Below are positions 4,843 through 61,342 of a stretch of DNA of 64,000 nt, piece after piece. The number at the start of each line of letters is the position of its first letter. Position 1 is the first letter of the stretch. This DNA comes from Zootoca vivipara (taxonomy: Eukaryota): positions 21,638,001 to 21,702,000 of the forward strand of contig NC_083284.1 in the NCBI RefSeq assembly GCF_963506605.1, written 5' to 3'. The translations under genes were made by a program, and so were the position numbers. The notes below the pieces were generated by a model that was given only the letters and a program-made list of their open reading frames with translations, was not told where the DNA came from and searched no databases.

Positions 4843-4987
4843 GGGGATGCGGGTGGCGCTGTGGGTTAAACCACAGAGTCTAGGGCTTGCCGATCAGAAG
4901 GTCGGCAGTTCGAATCCCTGCGACGAGGTGAGCTCCCATTGCTTGGTCCCAGCTCCTGCCCACCTAGCAGCTTGAAAGCACATCAAA
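4843..4987 (+). mobile_element. Sauria SINE, 5' part
   Basis: gggtggcgctgtgggttaaaccacagag...ttcgaatccc head shared with six other copies in the window. Confidence 0.9.
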
Positions 4988-15363: not shown

Positions 15364-15689
15364 GTAAAAGGTAAAGGTAAAGGGACCCCTGACCATTAGG
15401 TCCAGTCGTGACCGACTCTGGGGTTGCGCGCTCATCTTGCAATATTGGCCGAGGGAGCCGGCGTATAGCTTCCAGGTCATGTGGCCAGCATGACAAAGCT
15501 GCTTCTGGCAAACCAGAGCAGCACATGGAAACGCCGTTTACCTTCCCGCTGTAGCGGTTCCTATTTATCTACTTGCATTTTGACGTGCTTTCGAACTGCT
15601 AGGTTGGCAGGAGCTGGGACCAAGCAACGGGAGCTCACCCCGTCACAGGGATTCGAACCGCCGACCTTCTGATCAGCAAACCCTAGGCT
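15364..15689 (-). mobile_element. Sauria SINE (5'-truncated)
   Basis: Reverse complement of the Sauria SINE with (aaaggt)n tail. Confidence 0.93.
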
Positions 15690-17609: not shown

Positions 17610-18278
17610 GTAAGAGAAGACTATTGATGTTTTGAAATTACCACAACATTATTTCAGTTAACTGCTGTAATACTCGATTTAGAAATGTCGAACAACATTT
17701 TGTCCTCTGGTTCCATATCTAGCCTGTCTTGTTATGGGTGACTTAATATTGTTGTTTTTGCTTTGTTTGAACCTGTTGGGCATCTAAATGACATGAATAA
17801 AAATATATTCCTTTAAACAAGAAGATTCTCAATGAGGATGCCTTGTTTTGGCAGGGTAGCTGTAAGCTGTCCCTTATAAGACGTAAGGGAGCCCATAAGG
17901 CATGTGTGGTACTTATACAGTGTGGAGTAGCCCGTGTGGTTCCCTCCAGATGTTGGTCTGTGACTCCCAGAATCTCTGTCAATTGGCCATGCTAGCTTGG
18001 GCAAATGTACAACACCTGAAATTTCCATATTGACCATCCCATCACTACAATGTAGAATACATGTTTTCCCCAAAGGAGTATAGAATAGTTTACAAAGGAA
18101 AGCAATGGAAGAAAAGACCCTAAAATAAGAGCCAGTCAAGAACCGCGAATATTCTAGGGCTCAAGTCTTTGTTTTTTTATACTTTATTTCAGCATTGCCA
18201 CCTAGATCTTTATCATCCATACCTTGTCTTGTTATGCAAATATCCCCCCTCCCCACCATTGTGGCAACTTTGGAAAGT

Positions 18279-18634
18279 AAGGTAAAGGGTAAAGGGACCC
18301 CTGACCATTAGGTCCAGTCGTGACCGACTCTGGGGTTGCGCGCTCATCTCGCATTATTGGCCGAGGGAGCCGGCGTATAGCTTCCAGGTCATGTGACCAG
18401 CATGACAAAGCCACTTCTGGCAAACCAGAGCAGCACATGGAAATGCCGTTTACCTTCCCGCTGTAGCGGTTCCTATTTATCTACTTGCATTTTGACGTGC
18501 TTTCGAACTGCTAGGTTGGCAGGAGCTGGGACCAAGCAACGGGAGCTCACCCCGTCACAGGGATTCAAACTGCCAACCTTCTGATCAGCAAGCCCTAGGC
18601 TCAGTGGTTTAACCCACAGCGCCACCTGGGTCCC
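18279..18634 (-). mobile_element. Sauria SINE, full length
   Basis: Full head and tail; TSD ttggaaagta; junction repeats extend to 18710. Confidence 0.95.
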
Positions 18635-42903: not shown

Positions 42904-43033
42904 NNNNNNNNNNNNNNNNNNNNNNNNNNNNNNNNNNNNNNNNNNNNNNNNNNNNNNNNNNNNNNNNNNNNNNNNNNNNNNNNNNNNNNNNNNNNNNNNN
43001 NNNNNNNNNNNNNNNNNNNNNNNNNNNNNNNNN
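42904..43033. other. Assembly gap (130 N) covering the exon 13 acceptor
   Basis: Run of N directly followed by exon 13 sequence. Confidence 1.
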
Positions 43034-47232: not shown

Positions 47233-48008
47233 AGAACCTTTTAATGAGGGTGAAAGAACATTTTAATGAGGGTGAAAGAGGAGAGGGCAAAATATGGTCT
47301 GAAGCTCAACATCAAAAAAACCAAGATCATGGCCACTGGTCCCATCACCTCCTGGCAAATAGAAGGGGAAGAAATGGAGGTAGTGAGAGATTTTACTTTC
47401 TTGGGCTCCTTGATCACTGCAGATGGTGACAGCAGTCACGAAATTAAAAGACGCCTGCTTCTTGGGAGAAAAGCAATGACAAACCTAGACAGCATCTTAA
47501 AAAGCAGAGACATCACCTTGCCTACAAAGGTCCGTATAGTTAAAGCTATGGTTTTCCCAGTAGTGATGTATGGAAGTGAGAGCTGGACCATAAAGAAGGC
47601 TGATCGCCGAAGAATTGATGCTTTTGAATTCTGGTGCTGGAGGAGACTCTTGAGAGTCCCATGGACTGCAAGAAGATCAAACATCTCCATTCTGAAGGAA
47701 ATCAGCCCTGAGTGCTCCCTGGAAGGACAGATCCTGAAGCTGAGGCTCCAATACTTTGGCCACCTCATGAGAAGAGAAGACTCCCTGGAAACGACCCTGA
47801 TGTTGGGAAAGATTGAGGGCACTAGGAGAAGGGGACGACAGAGGACAAGATGGTTGGACAGTGTTCTCGAAGCTATGAACATGAGTTTGACCAAACTGCG
47901 GGAGGCAGTGGAAGACAGGAGTGCCTGGCGTGCTATGGCCCATGGGGTCACAAAGAGTCGGACACGACTAAACGACTAAACAACAACAACAACAACAACA
48001 CCAACAAC
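47233..48008 (+). mobile_element. RTE-BovB LINE, 5'-truncated; open 237-codon RT C-terminal frame (47266-47979)
   Basis: GLKLNIKKTKIM, KAMVFPVVMYGSESWT, IDAFEFWCWRRLLRVPW motifs; (caa)n tail; TSD agctcatgata. Confidence 0.97.
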
Positions 48009-48725: not shown

Positions 48726-49062
48726 GGGACGCGGGTGGCGCTGTGGTTTTAACCACTGAGCCTAGGGCTTGCCAATCAGAAGGTCGGCGGTTCGAATCCC
48801 CACGACGGGGTGAGCTCCTGTTGCTCGGTCCCTGCTCCTGCCAACCTAGCAGTCCAAAAGCACATCAAAGCACATTTACCTCCGGCAGGGAAGGTAAATG
48901 GCGTTTCCGTGTGCTGCTCTGGTTGACCAGAAGCGGCTTAGTCATGCTGCCCACATGACCCGGAAGCTGTACGGCGGCTCCCTCGGCCAGTAAAGCAAGA
49001 TGAGCGCCACAACCCCAGAGTCAGTCATGACTGGACCTAATGGTCAGGCGTCCCTTTACCTT
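48726..49062 (+). mobile_element. Sauria SINE
   Basis: TSD tacaagtc(a/g)taca. Confidence 0.95.
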
Positions 49063-49293
49063 TACAAGTCGTACAATACTGTTGCTGCCAGAATTGAATT
49101 TAGCACAGCAGTGATCTAAAAGTATCAAATAACTGAAACTTACAAATAGTATCGAACTCTGTGTTATTCAGCACTGGTTGGGGAATGAAAACATGCAGGA
49201 TACAGATGTAGACATGGGCTTACAATGAAAACCAATGTAAAATGAATGCTGCTGTATTTCATGGGGGGGACCTTGATTTCTAAGCTCCTAATG

Positions 49294-51464: not shown

Positions 51465-51666
51465 ACTCCCTTGCACTTGGCTGTTATCACAAAGCAGGCA
51501 GGAGTGGTGAAGGACTTGCTTAGAGCTGGGGCAGATGTGAGCCTCTTGGATCGCTATGGCAATTCGGTCTTGCATCTAGCAGCCAAGCAAGGAGACGAGA
51601 AGGTGTTGAGTATGCTGCTTAGCCACAAAGAGACCTCGCTGATGAGAGACCTTCCTAATGGGGAAG
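51465..51666 (+). CDS. NFKB1: NFKB1 exon 17, [11 protein letters not shown]...DLPNGE (ankyrin repeats)
   Basis: 202 nt, tgcag| ... AAG|gtaggc, phase 0 to 1. Confidence 0.98.
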
Positions 51667-53552: not shown

Positions 53553-53904
53553 ATTACCAAGCTTAAAACCATGGAGCCACCTGGGATGAACAAAGACATT
53601 GGATTCTTATCTCATTATGCATGATCTAGCTTTCTTTAGCGCCTCAGCCCTTGCTCCCCCCCCCCCCCCGCAGGACCAATTGCAGTCATCAGCAGTTGTT
53701 AACAGCCACCTACAGGTTTACCACTCCCATCAGCCCATCACCCATTCCCACCCACCCACCCACCCACCCACTCTCTGTATATACATAAGGGACTGACTTC
53801 TGTTTCAAGTGTATCTGAAGAAGTGTGCATGCACACGAAAGCTCATACCAAAATAAAAACTTAGTTGGTTTTTAAGGTGCTACTGAAGGAATTTTTTTTT
53901 ATTT
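53553..53904 (+). mobile_element. Penelope-like element 3' fragment (ORF C-terminus plus 3' region with hammerhead)
   Basis: 53553-53624 reads ITKLKTMEPPGMNKDIGFLSHYA*, like the C-terminus of the PLE GIY-YIG endonuclease; ttagttggt.tttaaggtgctac tail; tacaaaaaaa..c on both flanks. Confidence 0.85.
53811..53848 (+). ncRNA. Minimal type I hammerhead ribozyme motif (copy 1)
   Basis: GTAT-CTGAAGA-A-GTGTG(CATG)CACAC-GAAA-GC-TC^ATAC: stem I, intact core, stem II, palindromic AGCT stem III; predicted cut after C53844. Confidence 0.85.
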
Positions 53905-54147
53905 TACAAAAAAAACAGTTTTAAAAGGAAACGAAGCCAGCTGCTATGGTAAGCTCTCTTCCCCTACTGTTCTGACATGCATCCCGAATCTGTAGGCCCT
54001 CTCCTTTCATGAATTGCCGCTCCCAAATCATGAGAACCCCAAACCCAGCCTTCCTTTATTGCCCACGTTTAGCTTTTCTGCAGCTAAACGTGGAGCTTGA
54101 GATCTCATTGCACTATTCAGTTGCTGTACTGTGCTTCTTGATTGCAG

Positions 54148-54317
54148 GGCTGGCTGTTATTCACCTAGCCGTGATGGCAAATAGTGTGTCTTGTCTCCGG
54201 CTGCTCATTGCTGCTGGTGCTGATGTCAACGCCCAAGAGCAGAAATCTGGCAGAACTGCCTTGCACCTGGCTGTCGAACAAGGAAACATATCCTTGGCAG
54301 GTTGTCTTCTGCTTGAG
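54148..54317 (+). CDS. NFKB1: NFKB1 exon 18, GLAVIHLAV...[19 protein letters not shown]...LLLE
   Basis: 170 nt, tgcag| ... GAG|gtgagc. Confidence 0.98.
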
Positions 54318-55488
54318 GTGAGCTCCGTGGGGGCCAGAACCACTTTGTTTTCCTGGACAATTTTCCTTGCTTCCTAGGTCAAAGTTGGCCATGTGCAGCC
54401 CACAGGTCGTGCATGGCAATAATGTCACAGAAGCATTTCCTGTCATCCCAAATGTTCACTGTTGGCTGCTCTCCCACCACTGCACATTGAGCAATAAAAA
54501 AAAACCCCAAAGATAATTCTGCTGCTTTTTTGAATGAGACGATTGTAGTATAAATGCATAATTATTTTATACATTTTTAATTAAACAAAAAGTCTCTTTG
54601 ACCTGTCTTTAAGCTCAGGTTTTGTAGATTTGACCCACTGAAAGTTTTCCTTCCTCTGATCTTGGATACTTGCAGTGAAATCCTACATATAGCTACTCAG
54701 ATGTCACATTGAATTTATTGGTACTTACTCCCTGGTAACTGGGAATAGGATTGCAGCTTTAAATGGATAACATTCTAAAGCTATTATTAAGAGCCTAGCG
54801 GGGCTGAGAAGCTGAACCTTTAGAATACAATAAAGTTTTACAATCTAAAAATTGAGTTTAAGATTCTGTGGTGACTTTTCATTTATTTGTTTTTGTTAGC
54901 AGTTACTGAAATTCACTTCCATCTAGTAAGACATGGAGAGCAATGTATATTCTGATGGACCTGGGGGGTTTTTTTTGCAATTCAATAACAGTAAAACCTG
55001 CATAAATGTGTGATCAGATTTCACCAATAATTTAATGTTGTATTAGATCTGGAATGGGTGTGTGCATATGTATAATTTATTTTTATTTATTTTTTTGCAA
55101 AACATTCATTTTTGCAGCTTACTATCCAAGGTATTTTTGGGACCATACTGTTAAATATTTTTTCCCCACATTATTTATCTTTCCTGCTTAATTTGCATTT
55201 GTTTAAATAAATGTGAGTATACACTTAACTCAATATTTAATTATCAGAGTTCATCCAATGCTCTTTTTGTTCGCTTATTCGTTTACAAGTGGCTTCATTT
55301 CGGCTCTAATTTCAGCACTCTTCAGTATCGTTCTCACACAAGCCCATATACAAAAGTAAATGTTCATCCCAGGTCATGAGGCCTTGGAGGCTCTTTCTTT
55401 CAAGCAGGCCCAAAATTGTGTAGAGGCATCAAAATATGGCCCCAGTGTGCATGTAAGGAGCTAAACCAGCATCTCTCTTTTTTTAAAG

Positions 55489-55591
55489 AGTGATGCATTT
55501 GTCGACAGCACTACGTATGATGGAACGACTCCACTTCACATAGCAGCTGGAAGGGGGTCTATGAAAATGACAGCTCTTCTCAAAGCGGCAG
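55489..55591 (+). CDS. NFKB1: NFKB1 exon 19, [34 protein letters not shown]
   Basis: 103 nt, taaag| ... CAG|gtgaga. Confidence 0.98.
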
Positions 55592-55660
55592 GTGAGAAAA
55601 TAACATTAAACTCTTCCTGATGCTTTAGTGCTGTGAAATAGTTTTCCCCCAGCCTTTTTC

Positions 55661-55837
55661 TAGGGCAGTCTCGAGCAGGTCGCGTGCCCTGGTGCTGAGG
55701 GGCAGAGATCGCTCCGGCACCCCCGCCCTCACAGGGCGCAGCATGGTTTCCGCGCGGCTTTGCCACGCGGCGCCTGGCCTACCGGCTCGGCGCCCTGGCA
55801 CACCACGCCACCGGGGGTCTGCCTAGAGCCGGCCCTG
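55661..55837. mobile_element. GC-rich hAT (Tip100-like) MITE
   Basis: tagggcagtctcgag / ctagagccggccctg; perfect TSD cctttttc. Confidence 0.85.
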
Positions 55838-56046
55838 CCTTTTTCTCTTAATTTCCCAGGGGTATTCACAAGTTACATTCCGTGAGTGTATAGTCTTTGT
55901 ACACAAGTAGTAAAACAATACAGTTGCTGACATGCAGTGTAGAGTTTGTGTGCCTGTGTGCACAATGGTTGAACTATACAAATGACTAAGTCACACTGTT
56001 TCACACAAACTTGTGTAGACATGTTCTTGTGTTCAGTGTACTATTA

Positions 56047-56412
56047 GGCACTGTGGTCTAAACCACTGAGCCTCTTGGGATTGCTGATCAGAAGGTCGGC
56101 AGTTCAAATCCCCATGACGGGGTGAGCTCCTGTTGCTCTGTCCCAGCTCCTGCCTACCTAGCAGTTCAAAAGCACACCAGTGCAAGTAGATAAATAGGGA
56201 AGGTGAACAGCATTTTCGTGCGCTCTGGCACTCGTCACGATATCCCATTGCTCCAGAAGCAGTTTAGTCATGCTGGCCACATGACCCAGAAAGCTGTCTG
56301 TGGATAGACGCCGGCTCCCTTGGCCTGAAATCGAGATGGGGGCTGCAACCCCGTAGTCACCTTTGACTGGAATTAACCATCCAGAGGTCCTTTACCTTTA
56401 CCTTACCTTTAC
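56047..56412 (+). mobile_element. Sauria SINE (diverged subfamily)
   Basis: Head ctgtggtctaaaccactgag; (accttt)n tail; ctatta on both flanks. Confidence 0.9.
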
Positions 56413-57484
56413 CTATTATATGCAATAACAACAGACAAAAGCAATACTCCCCACAACACAATTTATAAGACCATAGATTGTTTAATTAGCCAAAGGCCTG
56501 GGAGAAGAGGAATGTTTTTGCCTGGTGCCTAAATATATGTAATGAAGATTACCTCTCTTATAATGTGTGAGGAAGATTCCTGCCCCCTATGCTGCTTTTC
56601 CATCACCAGTGTTGAAAGTAAGATTTAATGACTAGTTTTGTATGTGGAATGTGGTGGGAGTTGCCTCAGGTAGCAAAATGACCCCAGCCAAATCAGTAAT
56701 TTTCCCTTCCCTCCCAGAAGTTGGACTGCAAACCGTTTTGTTCTCTGAGCAACTCCAAGCCATTGCACTGTAGCAAAGAGGCATCTCATCACCACAAGCA
56801 TAATACAATATTAATAACTGGTGCATTTGAATGGATTTAAGCACTTGAGCTCCCCCTTCTGGAAAAACATTTGTAGCAACATTGAATAAGTTGCAGGAAA
56901 AGGCCCTAAGACATTGTTCTAATCATGCAACACTAAATTCTTAAAGAATGAGAAGTTTTTCAATAGGAGAGGGAAACGCGAAGAAAAATGAGAATCCTAA
57001 ACAAAACAAAGACTTCTGTTGATAGGCGTGAACCATGCAAAACGAATAAAAAGGTTCATTTTTTACCCAGTCTAGCATTTTAAATCTATCTTTCTCAGAT
57101 AAAAGTAAAGTAGGCTTTATATATGGCAACCTTTGGTGTGCGACAGATCTTTCCCATTCTGCATATAGAAGCCAAACAGTCTGGCAGTGGAGTCTTACTT
57201 CCAACATTGGTGATGCTTAGGCAGGTCAGATTAGGGGGAACAGGACACACAGTGTGAGGGCAGAGAGAAATGGCAAAGGGGATCAGGTGGAACAACCAGA
57301 GGCTGCCACTGCTGCCCGCCACCCCACATCACGCCACCCAAGGTGGTCGCCTCATAATGTTAGGGCTGGCCCTACACACCGGAATTCCTTTTGGGTATTT
57401 ACTTGACTGGATATTAGAGTAGAAGAGTTTACTGATGTGAAGGTGTTACGATCTTTCACCATGGTGCTTTGCTTCACCTCGCAG

Positions 57485-57609
57485 GCGCAGACCCCCACAT
57501 TGAGAACTTTGAACCATTGTTTGAACAAGATGATGTGAAAGACAAAGATGGTGAAGATGAAGGGGTCATACCTGGAACAACACCTTTGGACATGGCAACC
57601 AGCTGGGAG
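57485..57609 (+). CDS. NFKB1: NFKB1 exon 20, [13 protein letters not shown]...[13 protein letters not shown] (GC donor)
   Basis: 125 nt, cgcag| ... GAG|GCAAGT; only the GC site keeps the frame with exon 21. Confidence 0.95.
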
Positions 57610-58164
57610 GCAAGTGGTTAGGATGAAGGCATCTCAAGAGCCAGTACATCTTTCATTTAAGGCCTGTTTGAGAATATGGACCAGGCCCTCTTTCTCCAAT
57701 CTGTGTATGGGAATGTGGTCTTTAGTGTTAAAAACTATGAGAATATCCAGATATATTTTGCAGTTTGGGGTGACAATCAAAGATGCAGTGGTTGACTTTG
57801 CAGCATTTGCAGCTGTGACTTATTTACATTTAAAATATAATTCTCTTTTCTTTAAAGTATGGCTGCGCAGAAGCAGGGCGGCTTTTTTGTGACAGTACTC
57901 GCCTGTACAGAGTACTGGCACCTCTTTACTTTAAAAATGGAAGCAGTCACTTCCAATTTCTTCTTTGCAGTTATGCTGGAGGAGGTGGGGGAAGTGTGAG
58001 GGCCCAAGGCTCACCTAGGCACCTTCCTCCAGCACTAAAATACAGGTATGCATTATGCTACCAGCTGACCACTAGACGACTATGAATGCCAGACTCTAAA
58101 ACTTAAATGTACAGGATGCAGCTGGATGCTTTCGCGCTATTTAGCTAACTGTTCTTCCTAACAG

Positions 58165-58231
58165 GTGTACGATATCTTGAATGGTAAACCCTCCAAATCA
58201 AAGGTAGCTTCCGAAGATCTATTGATACAAG
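58165..58231 (+). CDS. NFKB1: NFKB1 exon 21, VYDILNGKPSKSKVASEDLLIQ
   Basis: 67 nt, aacag| ... AAG|gtaagg. Confidence 0.96.
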
Positions 58232-59160
58232 GTAAGGGTGTGTATAAGCGGGGGGTGGGGTGGGCTAGCTGAGATTTCTTTCATCTCCAGCTTAGCTTGA
58301 TTGCTCGGTATTATTTTGCAGGAGGTTTGCTGTAGGGCACTTCTTGTCCTTTGCTAAAAGCACACTTGAGATCTGAATTGTACAGTCTGAGCTAGGAGGC
58401 AGCACTTTTTGCCTTCAGCCATCTCAAGGTTTCTTAAACAACACTGTCTATTCTCCCTGGAAACCTCTCTCAGAACAGCCATGTGATGCCACCTCTCTCT
58501 CATCCTTATAAAAACCCTTTCCTGTGCAGCCATTGTCTTAGGCTGCAATTGTAAATGCACTTACCTGGAAGTAAGCCTTGTTGACCTCTTCAGGATGTGT
58601 ACAGTGTTTCACTCTTCACCTCCTAGATTTTATTTCCCAGCTGAAACAAAGACTACAGGAGCATCCTAACTATGGAAGCCAATGTAACCTACACTGACTT
58701 TAATTACCCCTAATTCATACTCTTGTTTTGGAGGAAGCCTGATACACATACACTCACTCCGTTACCCATTAAGCTTGGTGCCCCCTCCCCAACTCCCTGC
58801 CAAAATTTTAGTCAGTAAGCTCTTCAGGTCAGAGATGTTTCTCTTTTGCTATCACTCTGTAAAGTTCCATATTTGGATTATAAAATTCTCGCTTTAATAA
58901 AAATTCCTTAAACACTGGGGGGGGGAGATAGTGGATGTGCAGTGTTTAACTGATAATCAGGAGCAATCCATTTTAATAGACTAAAAAAAGTGTTCTCGAT
59001 TAATTAGGCAGCAGTGTTTTCAAAAACATTTATTAATAATACAAATACATATTTAAAAAGTGCATGTCATCTAAAAACAAAGCATTGTTTCTGTTTCAGG
59101 ACTAATTTTTACCCACTTGAAAACTTTTATAATCTACAGTTGCTCAACTCATTGCAATTC

Positions 59161-59196
59161 TATCTGAAGAAGTGTGCATGCACATGAAAGCTCATA
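59161..59196 (+). ncRNA. Minimal type I hammerhead ribozyme motif (copy 2)
   Basis: TAT-CTGAAGA-A-GTGTG(CATG)CACAT-GAAA-GC-TC^ATA; G-U at the base of stem II; predicted cut after C59193. Confidence 0.75.
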
Positions 59197-59294
59197 CCAA
59201 TGACAAACTTAGTTGGTCTCTAAGGTGCTACTGGAGGGAATTTTTTTATTTTGTTTCGACTACAGCAGACCAAGACGGCTACGTACCTGTAACT
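59164..59294 (+). mobile_element. Penelope-like element short 3' fragment
   Basis: Homologous to 53815-53904; aattctat on both flanks. Confidence 0.85.
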
Positions 59295-59860
59295 AATTCT
59301 ATGCATGTTTACTTTAGAAGTAACTCATGCCAAGTGGTCTTAGGATTGCAACCTAACATTTCTTTTGTCATGCGATAGTCCTAGTTATATAGATGAAAGC
59401 ATCTTTTTATAGCGCCTTTCCCTGTGAAAATTTGTTTCATTTCAGCAGCTAAGAAATTTTGCACATGCAAACCCAGCTCCTTAGCTTTTGTCCCATCCAG
59501 TCCCTAGCAAGAGAAATTACTCCTTGACAGCAACCTAGGCAAATTAATTTACTCACCATTATCTGGCCAGGTAGTGGATAAAAGGCACTAGATCACTGTG
59601 AAGATGAATTTTAACAGTTTTAAACTTTAAATAAGCACTGTCCTTTTGAAGTGTTATACTTGTGCTTTCTCTCTCTTATGGCTTCACTCTACCCATGGGT
59701 ATTATTGCTACGTTTAGTTGAAACAGAACAACATGCCCAGAAGGAAAAAGGAGGCTCACATCCAGCATTCACATTTGCACTAGATGCCCAAGTTCATGCT
59801 CAGTTCTGGCTGTAGTAAACAGTGGGTTTTTAACACTTGAGAAGCAAGGGTTAAAGTATA

Positions 59861-60197
59861 AGTAAAGGACCCCTGACAGTTAAGTCCAGTCGCAGACGAC
59901 TCTGGGGTTGCAGCAGTCATCTCACAGTTTTTCTGGGTTATGTGGCCAGCATGACTAAGCTGCTTCTGGCACAACAGAATACCGAAACCAGAGCAGTGCA
60001 CAGAAATGTCATTTACCTTCCCACTGGAGTGGTACCTATTTATCTACTTGCACTAGTGTGCTTTCGAACGGCTAGGTTAGCAGGAGCTGGGACTGAGCAA
60101 CGGGAGCTCACCCTGTCGCAGAGATTCAAACCGCCGACCTTCTGATCGGCAAGCCCAAGAGGCTCAGTGGTTTAGACCACAGCGCCACCTGCGTCCC
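59861..60197 (-). mobile_element. Sauria SINE
   Basis: Reverse complement of the family; aaagtata on both flanks; ends 60 nt before exon 22. Confidence 0.93.
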
Positions 60198-60257: not shown

Positions 60258-60430
60258 GAAACATGAAAGAGCTGAAGGAGGATGTCAAGTTACAGCTTTA
60301 CAAGTTACTTGAAGTGCCTGATCTGAATAAAAACTGGTCCATGCTGGCGCAAAAGCTTGGCCTAGGGATACTTAACAATGCCTTCCGGTTGAGCCCCTCT
60401 CCGTCAAAAACCCTGCTTGATAATTATGAG
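60258..60430 (+). CDS. NFKB1: NFKB1 exon 22, death domain [19 protein letters not shown]...LLDNYE
   Basis: 173 nt, tccag| ... GAG|gtaact. Confidence 0.98.
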
Positions 60431-61342
60431 GTAACTCGAATAACGTGCCTAGTGGGCCAGGCCAATGGCCCGTTTGGCCTTGCATCCTGTCTTCAATGTC
60501 TGTAAGCATCTGCCTAGTAAGATCCCGCAATAATTCCCTGTCACAACGACCCTGAGGGTGCCTGTGCCTATGACGACGTTTCTATTGATTATAGAACAGG
60601 AGACAGCCTATCATTTGCACATGGCAAGTTAGTCATTCCAGTGAACTTAACGAGAGGCCTGCAAACACGCAAGTTCTGTGCATTTATCAGTGTGCATATT
60701 GGGCTTGGACTGGGGGATTTGGGACCTGTTGATCATTTCCAACCATATGACGTTTAGAATACCCCTTTGCAGGAGGATGTTTGAAGGATCCAACCCCTTT
60801 TTATGCTGCTGCATTATTTAGAAACGCACTGTAAGGTGAAAGATTCCCTCGGTGTTAATCTCAGAAAAAGTTTGTGTGGTCGTGCCATGCACGTGGCAAG
60901 ACGCAATCATATAGGTCCTTCATTTGTGAATTAAACAATGCTCTCCAACTATTATATATTTTATTCTGTCATGTGGCTGCATGTTTATAAGAATTCTAGG
61001 GGTATCTTGTGTTTGTTTCTGGGCCCAATTGAAGAGGTTCACGTTAAAGAGTTTACTACAGGCTCCCTTGGGTCAGACTAGCAGAGAAAGGCCCCTTGTT
61101 AGTTCCACCACCCTCAGAAGCTGGGGGTTGGCAGCCCCTAAAGCTAGGCTGTGGAATATAACTGGCACAAGCATTGTAGTTTTGTCATATGCTAATGATG
61201 CACCTTGACTTTGACACCTGAGATATATCTATTTTAGGACCCACCCTATTCTTTTGATGGTGATTGGTTTTAACTGATTTTAATATCTTTTTACATTGTT
61301 GTAACCTACCCCAGGACCTTATTATTACCACCTGCCGTATAA

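What the first reader, a model, noticed from the sequence alone, without database searches (positions are those of the whole stretch)
53811..59196. Two sense-strand minimal hammerhead ribozymes in NFKB1 pre-mRNA bracket an in-frame block of exons 18-21
Seen: introns 17 and 21 each contain CTGAAGA-A-stem II-GAAA-GC-TC with a flanking stem I, on the transcribed strand. The predicted cuts (C53844, C59193) are 5349 nt apart. Exons 18-21 total 465 nt, and exon 17 ends and exon 22 begins in phase 1, so losing the block keeps the frame. Known: Penelope-like elements carry minimal hammerheads whose short palindromic stem III (here AGCU) works poorly as a monomer and is rescued by pairing with a second copy. 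Inference: one transcript supplies both partners. A double hammerhead could cut the pre-mRNA downstream of the p50 region, favour an isoform lacking the distal ankyrin repeats, or release a circularisable fragment. The more likely default is that both are inert relics.
Basis: partly seen in the sequence, partly recalled or inferred. Interest (0 to 1): 0.8.

Follow-up and report, generated by a model that had tools for sequence, protein, structure and literature searches.

The report
Two dead Penelope hammerhead insertions, NFKB1
Two introns of a lizard NFKB1 gene each carry a short leftover piece of a Penelope-like jumping gene that includes a stripped-down hammerhead ribozyme motif; the motifs are real, but nothing indicates that they cut the NFKB1 transcript, so this is an ordinary repeat pattern.

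Summary
CTGAAGA-A-helix II-GAAA-GC-TC stands on the + (NFKB1 sense) strand at 53815-53844 and 59164-59193. The predicted cut sites, C53844 and C59193, are 5349 nt apart. Exons 18-21 sum to 465 nt, and introns 17 and 21 are both phase 1.

The two motifs are not independent. They are two copies (86% identity over 103 columns) of one short interspersed repeat. Their architecture matches the published minimal hammerhead of Penelope-like elements. Copy B is a discrete 131-nt insertion with an 8-bp target duplication that starts at the C of CUGAAGA. Copy A is a ~91-nt short form beside a (CCCA)n microsatellite.

The case for a functional ribozyme pair is weak:
- No Rfam hammerhead model scores either site, even at E<=10.
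- Helix I is only 4 bp (A) and 3 bp (B).
- Copy B carries a CpG-type C11.1-to-U change.
- In the nearest-neighbour model, the helices needed for a double hammerhead add no stability.
- Published work reports very low activity for such motifs even as tandem dimers, and normal splicing after slow hammerhead cleavage inside an intron.

This scan had already noted the same repeat family elsewhere in this genome. My verdict is inert relics of a known kind, with about a 2% chance of a real double-hammerhead role.

The parts
53815..53844 (+). Minimal hammerhead motif A. It consists of CUGAAGA, a bulged A, helix II GUGUG(CAUG)CACAC with G10.1-C11.1, GAAA, the palindromic AGCU and C17 at 53844.
   Evidence: feature list of PMC4209133
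53811..53848 (+). Span holding the possible helix I of copy A: GUAU (53811-53814) pairs with AUAC (53845-48), 4 bp only.
53803..53905 (+). Repeat copy A, in intron 17, 303 nt upstream of exon 18. It is the short form (~91 nt from CTGAAGA to the T-run), without the 3' tail, and has no clear target duplication.
53747..53771 (+). (CCCA)n microsatellite about 45 nt upstream of copy A. Penelope-like elements are reported to prefer microsatellite targets.
   Evidence: PMC8557442
59164..59193 (+). Minimal hammerhead motif B. It is the same as A except that C11.1 is U (CACACG to CACATG, a CpG-type transition), which gives G10.1-U11.1. C17 is at 59193.
59164..59294 (+). Repeat copy B, a discrete 131-nt insertion in intron 21. 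It is the long form, with a ~40-nt 3' tail (59253-59294) that still holds three CpGs.
59156..59163 (+). Upstream copy of the 8-bp target-site duplication AATTCTAT of insertion B. Its last 3 nt, UAU, are the only helix I 5' strand that copy B has.
59295..59302 (+). Downstream copy of the target-site duplication AATTCTAT.
53847..53869 (+). Hairpin ACCAA...UUGGU just 3' of the cut site, conserved in both copies (in B at about 59196-59217). It ties up the helix I 3' strand.
51465..51666 (+). NFKB1 exon '17' (ankyrin repeats). It ends in phase 1.
54148..54317 (+). Exon '18', 170 nt, ankyrin repeats.
55489..55591 (+). Exon '19', 103 nt, ankyrin repeat.
57485..57609 (+). Exon '20', 125 nt, followed by a GC-AG intron (donor GAG|GCAAGT).
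58165..58231 (+). Exon '21', 67 nt, linker (VYDILNGKPS...).
60258..60432 (+). Exon '22', the start of the Death domain. It begins in phase 1.

Best explanation
These are two independent, ORF-less insertions of the hammerhead-bearing end piece of a lizard Penelope-like retroelement (PLE). One landed in NFKB1 intron 17 and the other in intron 21, both by chance in the sense orientation. The ribozyme motif was selected in the parent element, not at these sites. Each insertion starts at the CUGAAGA box, so it keeps the catalytic core and helix II but almost none of the helix I 5' strand. Helix III can only form by pairing with a second copy. In the NFKB1 pre-mRNA the motifs are passengers that are spliced out with their introns and have no effect on processing. 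The in-frame exon block between them is coincidence. What is shown: the motifs, their homology, the boundaries of insertion B, the exon arithmetic, and the weak predicted pairing. What is inferred: the Penelope parentage, which rests on the published motif architecture and on unverified scan notes; and the lack of cleavage, which rests on energetics and literature and not on RNA data from this locus.
For: The two copies are homologous over 103 columns at 86.4% identity, with unrelated flanks. Copy B is bounded by an 8-bp target duplication that abuts CTGAAGA exactly, giving a 131-nt insertion. [quoted passage not shown] That paper also says most such motifs occur as single dispersed elements from truncated PLEs and are present in reptiles. 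The long and short 3' ends of B and A fit the optional 30-40 bp PLE 'tail' explained by two reverse-transcription start sites in an Anolis element (PMC11167929). Copy A sits beside a (CCCA)n tract, and PLEs show a microsatellite bias and heavy 5' truncation (PMC8557442). Penelope repeats are annotated in a lacertid genome (PMC9498476). There are signs of decay: C11.1 to U at a CpG in B, and several transitions plus T-run expansion in A. No Rfam hammerhead model matches at the gathering threshold or at E<=10, even on 121-171 nt pieces. The active double-hammerhead pairing scores -7.7 kcal/mol, against -8.8 for the two helix II hairpins alone and -29.8 for the competing helix II palindrome duplex. 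Folds in context have z-scores of -0.40 and +1.68 and do not contain the hammerhead junction. Earlier scan notes describe the same 92-nt and 130-nt classes as very abundant in this genome (leads only).
Against: No RNA data could be examined for this locus. Conservation and cleavage are therefore untested. The hammerhead segment differs at 1 of 30 positions between the copies, against about 13 of 73 elsewhere. This could hint at constraint, but it is equally expected if the core is conserved in the source elements. Nearest-neighbour energies ignore tertiary contacts and protein chaperones. No PLE ORF lies in the window, and no family consensus was available to me, so the parentage is by architecture only.
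Confidence: 0.88

Rival explanations
1. The two minimal hammerheads on one NFKB1 pre-mRNA pair through AGCU:AGCU (helix III) and swapped helices I to form a long-range double hammerhead. This cuts the transcript at 53844 and 59193 and so favours a truncated RNA, an exon 17-22 isoform without the distal ankyrin repeats, or a circularisable 5.3-kb fragment.
For: Both cores are on the sense strand, and copy A has every conserved core base. Helix III is palindromic, as in PLE hammerheads that are thought to act as dimers (PMC4209133, PMC6765202). The bracketed exons sum to 465 nt and both introns are phase 1. Domesticated intronic hammerheads do exist in amniotes (PMC6155905).
Against: The required inter-copy helices (4 + 4 + 3 bp) give no net stabilisation, and the competing helix II palindrome duplex is about 22 kcal/mol better. 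The partners are 5.3 kb apart, and the intron 17 acceptor is made only 0.3 kb after copy A, so intron 17 can be removed before copy B exists (inference). Copy B has G10.1-U11.1 and a 3-bp helix I. PLE minimal hammerheads cleave very poorly even as adjacent dimers. No RNA-seq ends were seen at the Anolis PLE hammerhead site. Introns cut by a slow hammerhead still splice normally through exon tethering. The same repeat is reported as abundant in the genome, so two sense copies in one gene are expected in many genes (lead only). In-frame pairs make up 4 of 10 intron pairs among introns 17-21.
Confidence: 0.02
2. The motifs retain trace self-cleaving activity. This could happen with any other copy of the abundant repeat as a partner in trans, or in excised lariats. 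It would have no effect on NFKB1 mRNA output.
For: Copy A has an intact core and a 4-bp helix I. An Anolis PLE hammerhead does cleave in vitro, and core mutants abolish that cleavage (PMC11167929). Many potential partner copies exist in nuclear RNA if the family is abundant (lead only).
Against: The energetic and kinetic objections are the same as above. Single minimal motifs showed no detectable cleavage in vitro (PMC4209133). The insertions lack most of the helix I 5' strand.
Confidence: 0.08
3. Copy A matters through its AATAAA (53852-53857, sense strand) and not through the ribozyme. It would act as an intronic polyadenylation site that yields a p105 mRNA truncated after the proximal ankyrin repeats.
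For: AATAAA lies 8 nt downstream of C17 in copy A only. A T-rich run follows at 53888-53905.
Against: A lone AATAAA is common in AT-rich introns. Copy B has AATGACAAA at the same place, so this looks like a chance mutation. There are no expression data.
Confidence: 0.02

Closest known systems
Minimal hammerhead ribozymes of Penelope-like elements (Cervera & de la Pena 2014, PMC4209133; Lunse et al. 2017 as cited in PMC6765202)
   Same: Both are type I layouts with a CUGANGA box, an extra nucleotide before helix II, G10.1-C11.1, and a long helix II. In both, helix III is reduced to a palindrome (here AGCU) that can only pair with a second copy, and helix I is short. Both are found mostly as single dispersed motifs from truncated elements, and such motifs are reported in reptiles.
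   Different: No Penelope ORF or pseudo-LTR lies next to these copies. Helix I here is even shorter (3-4 bp, against 4-5 bp reported). Copy B has G-U at 10.1-11.1.
Poseidon element of Anolis carolinensis (PAc; Frangieh et al. 2024, PMC11167929)
   Same: Both are lizard PLEs in which the hammerhead sits shortly upstream of the end of inserted copies. In both, insertions end at one of two sites 30-40 bp apart (the 'tail'), which fits the short form (A) and long form (B) seen here. No RNA-seq ends were found at the PAc hammerhead cut site.
   Different: The sequence family differs. My two probe words from this repeat were not found in the held supplement. In PAc the start codon is 26 nt before the cut site, which does not fit this motif.
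Domesticated intronic hammerheads of amniotes (HH9 in RECK, HH10; de la Pena & Garcia-Robles 2010, as reviewed in PMC6155905)
   Same: Both are sense-strand hammerhead motifs inside an intron of a protein-coding gene, proposed to influence mRNA biogenesis.
   Different: The amniote ones are canonical type I ribozymes with helix I/II loop contacts and a real helix III. They are ultraconserved across amniotes and are recognised by Rfam models. The motifs here have none of these features that could be tested.
Animal non-LTR retrozymes (PMC7229834; bioRxiv 10.64898/2026.07.22.740005)
   Same: Both are short ORF-less hammerhead-bearing sequences related to PLE pseudo-LTRs. Monomer copies are dispersed along chromosomes, and many lie in introns.
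   Different: Retrozymes are defined by tandem units that are cut into circular RNAs. Here there are two single units 5.3 kb apart, separated by unrelated gene sequence.

Membership tests
Hammerhead ribozyme (catalytic motif) | Conserved core: C3 U4 G5 A6 N7 G8 A9 ... G12 A13 A14 ... U16.1 H17 | tested here: met
   Both sites have CUGAAGA ... GAAA ... UC.
Hammerhead ribozyme (catalytic motif) | Helix II closed by G10.1-C11.1 | tested here: inconclusive
   Copy A has G-C. Copy B has G-U after a C-to-T change at a CpG.
Hammerhead ribozyme (catalytic motif) | Helix III able to form within the molecule | tested here: not met
   The segment is A15.1-GC-U16.1. A 2-nt loop cannot close, so a second copy is required.
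Hammerhead ribozyme (catalytic motif) | Helix I that positions the cleavage site | tested here: inconclusive
   Helix I is 4 bp in A and 3 bp in B. It is not present in the context MFE folds, and its 3' strand is taken up by a conserved ACCAA/UUGGU hairpin.
Hammerhead ribozyme (catalytic motif) | Match to an Rfam hammerhead covariance model (Hammerhead_1, _3, _II, HH9, HH10) | tested here: not met
   There was no hammerhead match at the gathering threshold on the whole window, nor at E<=10 on 5.8 kb, 121 nt and 171 nt.
Hammerhead ribozyme (catalytic motif) | Self-cleavage after H17 | not testable with these tools
   This needs an in vitro assay or RNA end mapping.
Penelope-like element minimal hammerhead | Unpaired nucleotide between A9 and G10.1, enlarged helix II, palindromic 15.2-16.2 | tested here: met
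   There is an A after CUGAAGA, a 5-7 bp palindromic helix II, and AGCU. The criteria are from PMC4209133.
Penelope-like element minimal hammerhead | Lies in the pseudo-LTR or 3' region of an element encoding RT plus GIY-YIG endonuclease | not testable with these tools
   There is no PLE ORF in the window. No other copies were found in the metagenome or viral collections. Earlier scan notes report full elements elsewhere in this genome (unchecked).
Penelope-like element minimal hammerhead | Dispersed, 5'-truncated multi-copy insertions with target duplications, an optional 30-40 bp tail, and a microsatellite bias | tested here: met
   There are two copies with unrelated flanks. Copy B has an 8-bp TSD and a ~40-nt tail that A lacks. 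A (CCCA)n tract lies next to A.
Domesticated intronic hammerhead (HH9/HH10 type) | Canonical helix III and helix I/II loop-loop contacts | tested here: not met
   There is no helix III hairpin. Helix I is open and 3-4 bp long, with no loop 1.
Domesticated intronic hammerhead (HH9/HH10 type) | Conservation at the orthologous intron position across species | not testable with these tools
The nearest exon 18 ORF relatives have unrelated upstream intron sequence.
Non-LTR retrozyme | Head-to-tail tandem units, each with a hammerhead | tested here: not met
   These are single units 5349 nt apart, with exons, SINEs and unique intron sequence between them.

The most novel reading that the evidence does not exclude
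Two retroelement-derived minimal hammerheads that are inactive alone pair across 5.3 kb of one nascent NFKB1 pre-mRNA into a double hammerhead. This would excise or disconnect the in-frame exon 18-21 block and so tune how much p105 carries the distal ankyrin repeats.
Probability: 0.02. Interest if true: 0.75.

Novelty: already known. Interest (0 to 1): 0.1.

Why it matters
If the long-range double hammerhead were real, it would be the first case of two dispersed retroelement ribozyme halves cooperating in cis to reshape a host mRNA, and it would occur in a central immune regulator. As the evidence stands, the locus is a further example of a known fact: Penelope-like elements scatter minimal hammerhead motifs through non-mammalian vertebrate genomes, introns included. 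The practical lesson for the scan is that pairs of such motifs in one gene are expected from copy number alone. They should be ranked by conservation or RNA-end evidence, not by exon arithmetic.

Tried and rejected
- Chance motif: rejected. The two sites are homologous over 103 columns.
- Segmental duplication of intron sequence: rejected. The flanks are unrelated, and copy B has its own target duplication.
- Rfam: no hammerhead family was hit at any threshold. This is expected for motifs without a helix III, but it means there is no model-based support.
- More family copies from public collections: two metagenome scans and one viral scan found nothing. These collections hold little or no lizard DNA.
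- RNA and DNA reads: the look-up of sequencing runs offered three raw RNA runs of the same species and one DNA run of a relative.
The one long relative ORF (P0002) does not align upstream of the exon.
- Anolis PAc supplement: my probe words from this repeat were not found there.
- Lunse et al. 2017 is not held in the library.
- A second, degenerate core-like box (CUAAGGU) lies after the ACCAA/UUGGU hairpin. With only two copies I could not tell whether it is a relic or chance.

Full report
**What is there.** The + strand carries CTGAAGA-A-GTGTGCATGCACAC-GAAA-GC-TC at 53815-53844, and the same string with one change (CACAC to CACAT) at 59164-59193. In hammerhead numbering these are:
- C3-A9, followed by one extra A;
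- helix II (GUGUG/CACAC around CAUG; the whole 14-mer is a palindrome);
- G12-A14, then A15.1-G-C-U16.1, then C17.

A pattern search expects 0.21 matches per window with up to two mismatches and finds two exact ones. The two sites also share 103 aligned columns at 86.4% identity (53803-53905 against 59152-59252, E 4e-27). Nothing else in the window resembles them. They are therefore two copies of one interspersed repeat, not two independently arisen motifs.

**The gene.** The + strand encodes NFKB1.
- Stop-to-stop frames show the Rel homology exons, the glycine-rich region, the ankyrin exons and the C-terminal exons in order (recognised from my knowledge of the human protein).
- The exon 18 frame hits proteins named NFKB1 or p105.
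- Pfam finds ankyrin repeats in exons 17-19 and a Death domain in exons 22-23.
- Reading the splice sites gives exon 17 at 51465-51666, exon 18 at 54148-54317 (170 nt), exon 19 at 55489-55591 (103 nt), exon 20 at 57485-57609 (125 nt, GC donor), exon 21 at 58165-58231 (67 nt), and exon 22 from 60258.
- The sum for exons 18-21 is 465 nt. Introns 17 and 21 both interrupt a codon after its first base.

It is not remarkable, however. Introns 17, 19 and 21 are phase 1 and introns 18 and 20 are phase 0, so 4 of the 10 intron pairs in this stretch bracket an in-frame block. I did not build or search a joined exon model; exons were searched one at a time by reference.

**What the repeat is.** Copy B is bounded by a perfect 8-bp direct repeat, AATTCTAT, at 59156-59163 and 59295-59302. 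The upstream copy abuts CTGAAGA directly. This defines a 131-nt insertion, 59164-59294, that begins at the first core base. Copy A shares the same start and runs about 91 nt to a T-run. It lacks the last ~40 nt of B, has no clear duplication, and sits about 45 nt from a (CCCA)n tract.

The motif has the traits that Cervera and de la Pena list for the minimal hammerheads of Penelope-like elements (PMC4209133):
- G10.1-C11.1;
- an enlarged helix II;
- a short helix I;
- a palindromic 15.2-16.2 in place of a real helix III.

They also note that most such motifs are single dispersed copies from truncated elements, and that reptiles have them. Penelope-like elements are heavily 5'-truncated, favour microsatellite targets and carry an optional 30-40 bp tail (PMC8557442). 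In an Anolis element that tail is the stretch between two reverse-transcription start sites a short way downstream of the hammerhead (PMC11167929). The short form (A) and long form (B) fit this picture. Penelope repeats are annotated in a lacertid genome (PMC9498476).

Notes from this same scan describe 92-nt and 130-nt hammerhead-bearing Penelope pieces as very abundant elsewhere in this genome. I treat these notes as leads. My two copies agree with them in length, start point and target duplication.

The parentage is an inference from architecture. There is no Penelope ORF in the window, and I could not obtain a family consensus.

**Can the pair act as a ribozyme?** Several things speak against it.
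- *Models.* No Rfam hammerhead model matches, either at the gathering threshold on the window or at E<=10 on 5.8 kb, 121 nt and 171 nt.
- *Helix III.* It cannot form in a monomer, because a 2-nt loop cannot close.
- *Helix I.* It is 4 bp in A (GUAU/AUAC) and 3 bp in B (UAU/AUA). Because the insertions start at the core, these bases come from the target site or from junction microhomology, not from a designed helix. The 3' strand of helix I is also complementary to a conserved UUGGU about 15 nt downstream, which forms a competing hairpin in both copies.
- *Copy B.* It has U at 11.1, a CpG-type transition, which leaves a G-U pair at the position that is most conserved in helix II. From general hammerhead mutagenesis knowledge, this is expected to weaken catalysis.
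- *Energetics.* I wrote out the double-hammerhead pairing explicitly: two helix II hairpins, the inter-copy AGCU:AGCU pairing, and swapped helices I. Its nearest-neighbour energy is -7.7 kcal/mol. The two helix II hairpins alone give -8.8, so the inter-copy helices cost about 1 kcal/mol, even before the 5.3-kb separation is counted. The best inter-copy pairing is a 14-bp duplex of the two helix II palindromes at -29.8, which is not the catalytic fold.
- *Folds in context.* They are no more stable than shuffled sequence (z -0.40 and +1.68) and do not contain the three-way junction.

These calculations ignore tertiary contacts and proteins.

**What the literature adds.**
- Single minimal Penelope hammerheads showed no detectable cleavage. 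Dimeric and trimeric constructs showed low cleavage, mostly at non-physiological Mg2+ (PMC4209133; summarised in PMC6765202).
- For the Anolis element, no RNA-seq reads begin or end at the hammerhead site (PMC11167929).
- A hammerhead that cuts inside an intron co-transcriptionally does not prevent splicing, because exons stay tethered to the polymerase. Only a fast ribozyme aborted splicing (PMC2995048, reporting Dye et al. 2006 and the Bentley laboratory).
- The intron 17 acceptor is transcribed 0.3 kb after copy A, whereas copy B appears 5.3 kb later. Intron 17 can therefore be removed before a partner exists (inference).
- The known functional intronic hammerheads of amniotes are canonical, ultraconserved motifs (PMC6155905), unlike these.

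**What could not be done.**
- The look-up of sequencing runs listed raw RNA-seq runs of the same species and a DNA run of a related species.
The only long relative ORF does not align upstream of the exon.
- Metagenome and viral pattern scans found no further copies.
- Cleavage, exon 17-22 joining and conservation therefore remain untested at this locus.

**Verdict.** The best explanation (about 0.88) is two independent, dead mini-insertions of a Penelope-like element's hammerhead end piece, which are passengers in NFKB1 introns 17 and 21. Trace cleavage without consequence is possible (about 0.08). A functional long-range double hammerhead is unlikely (about 0.02). An effect of the AATAAA in copy A is equally unlikely (about 0.02). 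The kind of element is already known, and the scan had already met this family on other DNA of the same genome. Interest is low.

Noticed in passing
window 57609-57615 (intron 20 donor): Intron 20 appears to be a GC-AG intron. Exon 20 ends ...TGGGAG and is followed by GCAAGT, and only this border keeps the frame into exon 21 (GTGTACGAT = VYD).
   Followed up: partly
window 55600-55880 (intron 19): This is a 250-300 nt GC-rich, CpG-rich island (GC 0.62-0.64, CpG observed/expected 0.82-0.84) inside an otherwise CpG-poor intron. Its function is unknown; it could be a repeat or an internal regulatory element.
   Followed up: partly
window 56047-56409, 59852-60197 (-), 39898-40244, 48726-49065, 18274-18634 (-), 15368-15686 (-), 4844-4985: There are at least seven copies, at 72-85% identity, of a ~350-nt SINE-like repeat scattered through the NFKB1 introns on both strands. 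This is far more than the two Penelope pieces.
   Followed up: partly
window 47254-47976 (+): An open frame of 241 aa in an intron looks like the C-terminal part of a LINE reverse transcriptase (RTE/Bov-B-like, judged by eye only).
   Followed up: no
window 53852-53857: An AATAAA on the sense strand lies 8 nt after the predicted cut site of copy A, followed by a T-rich run. Copy B has AATGACAAA at the same place.
   Followed up: partly
window 53866-53892 and 59214-59240: After the conserved ACCAA/UUGGU hairpin, both copies continue with CUAAGGU..GGAAU. This loosely resembles a second, degenerate hammerhead core (G5 and A9 positions changed). With two copies, relic and chance cannot be told apart.
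   Followed up: no
window 42904-43033: A run of 130 N lies next to the exon that follows the glycine-rich region of NFKB1.
   Followed up: no
window 53803-53814 vs 59152-59163: The 11-12 nt upstream of both insertions match at 8 of 11 positions (TTCAAGTGTAT / TGCAATTCTAT), although in copy B they are part of the target duplication. This may reflect a target-site preference of the endonuclease or microhomology at the junction.
   Followed up: partly
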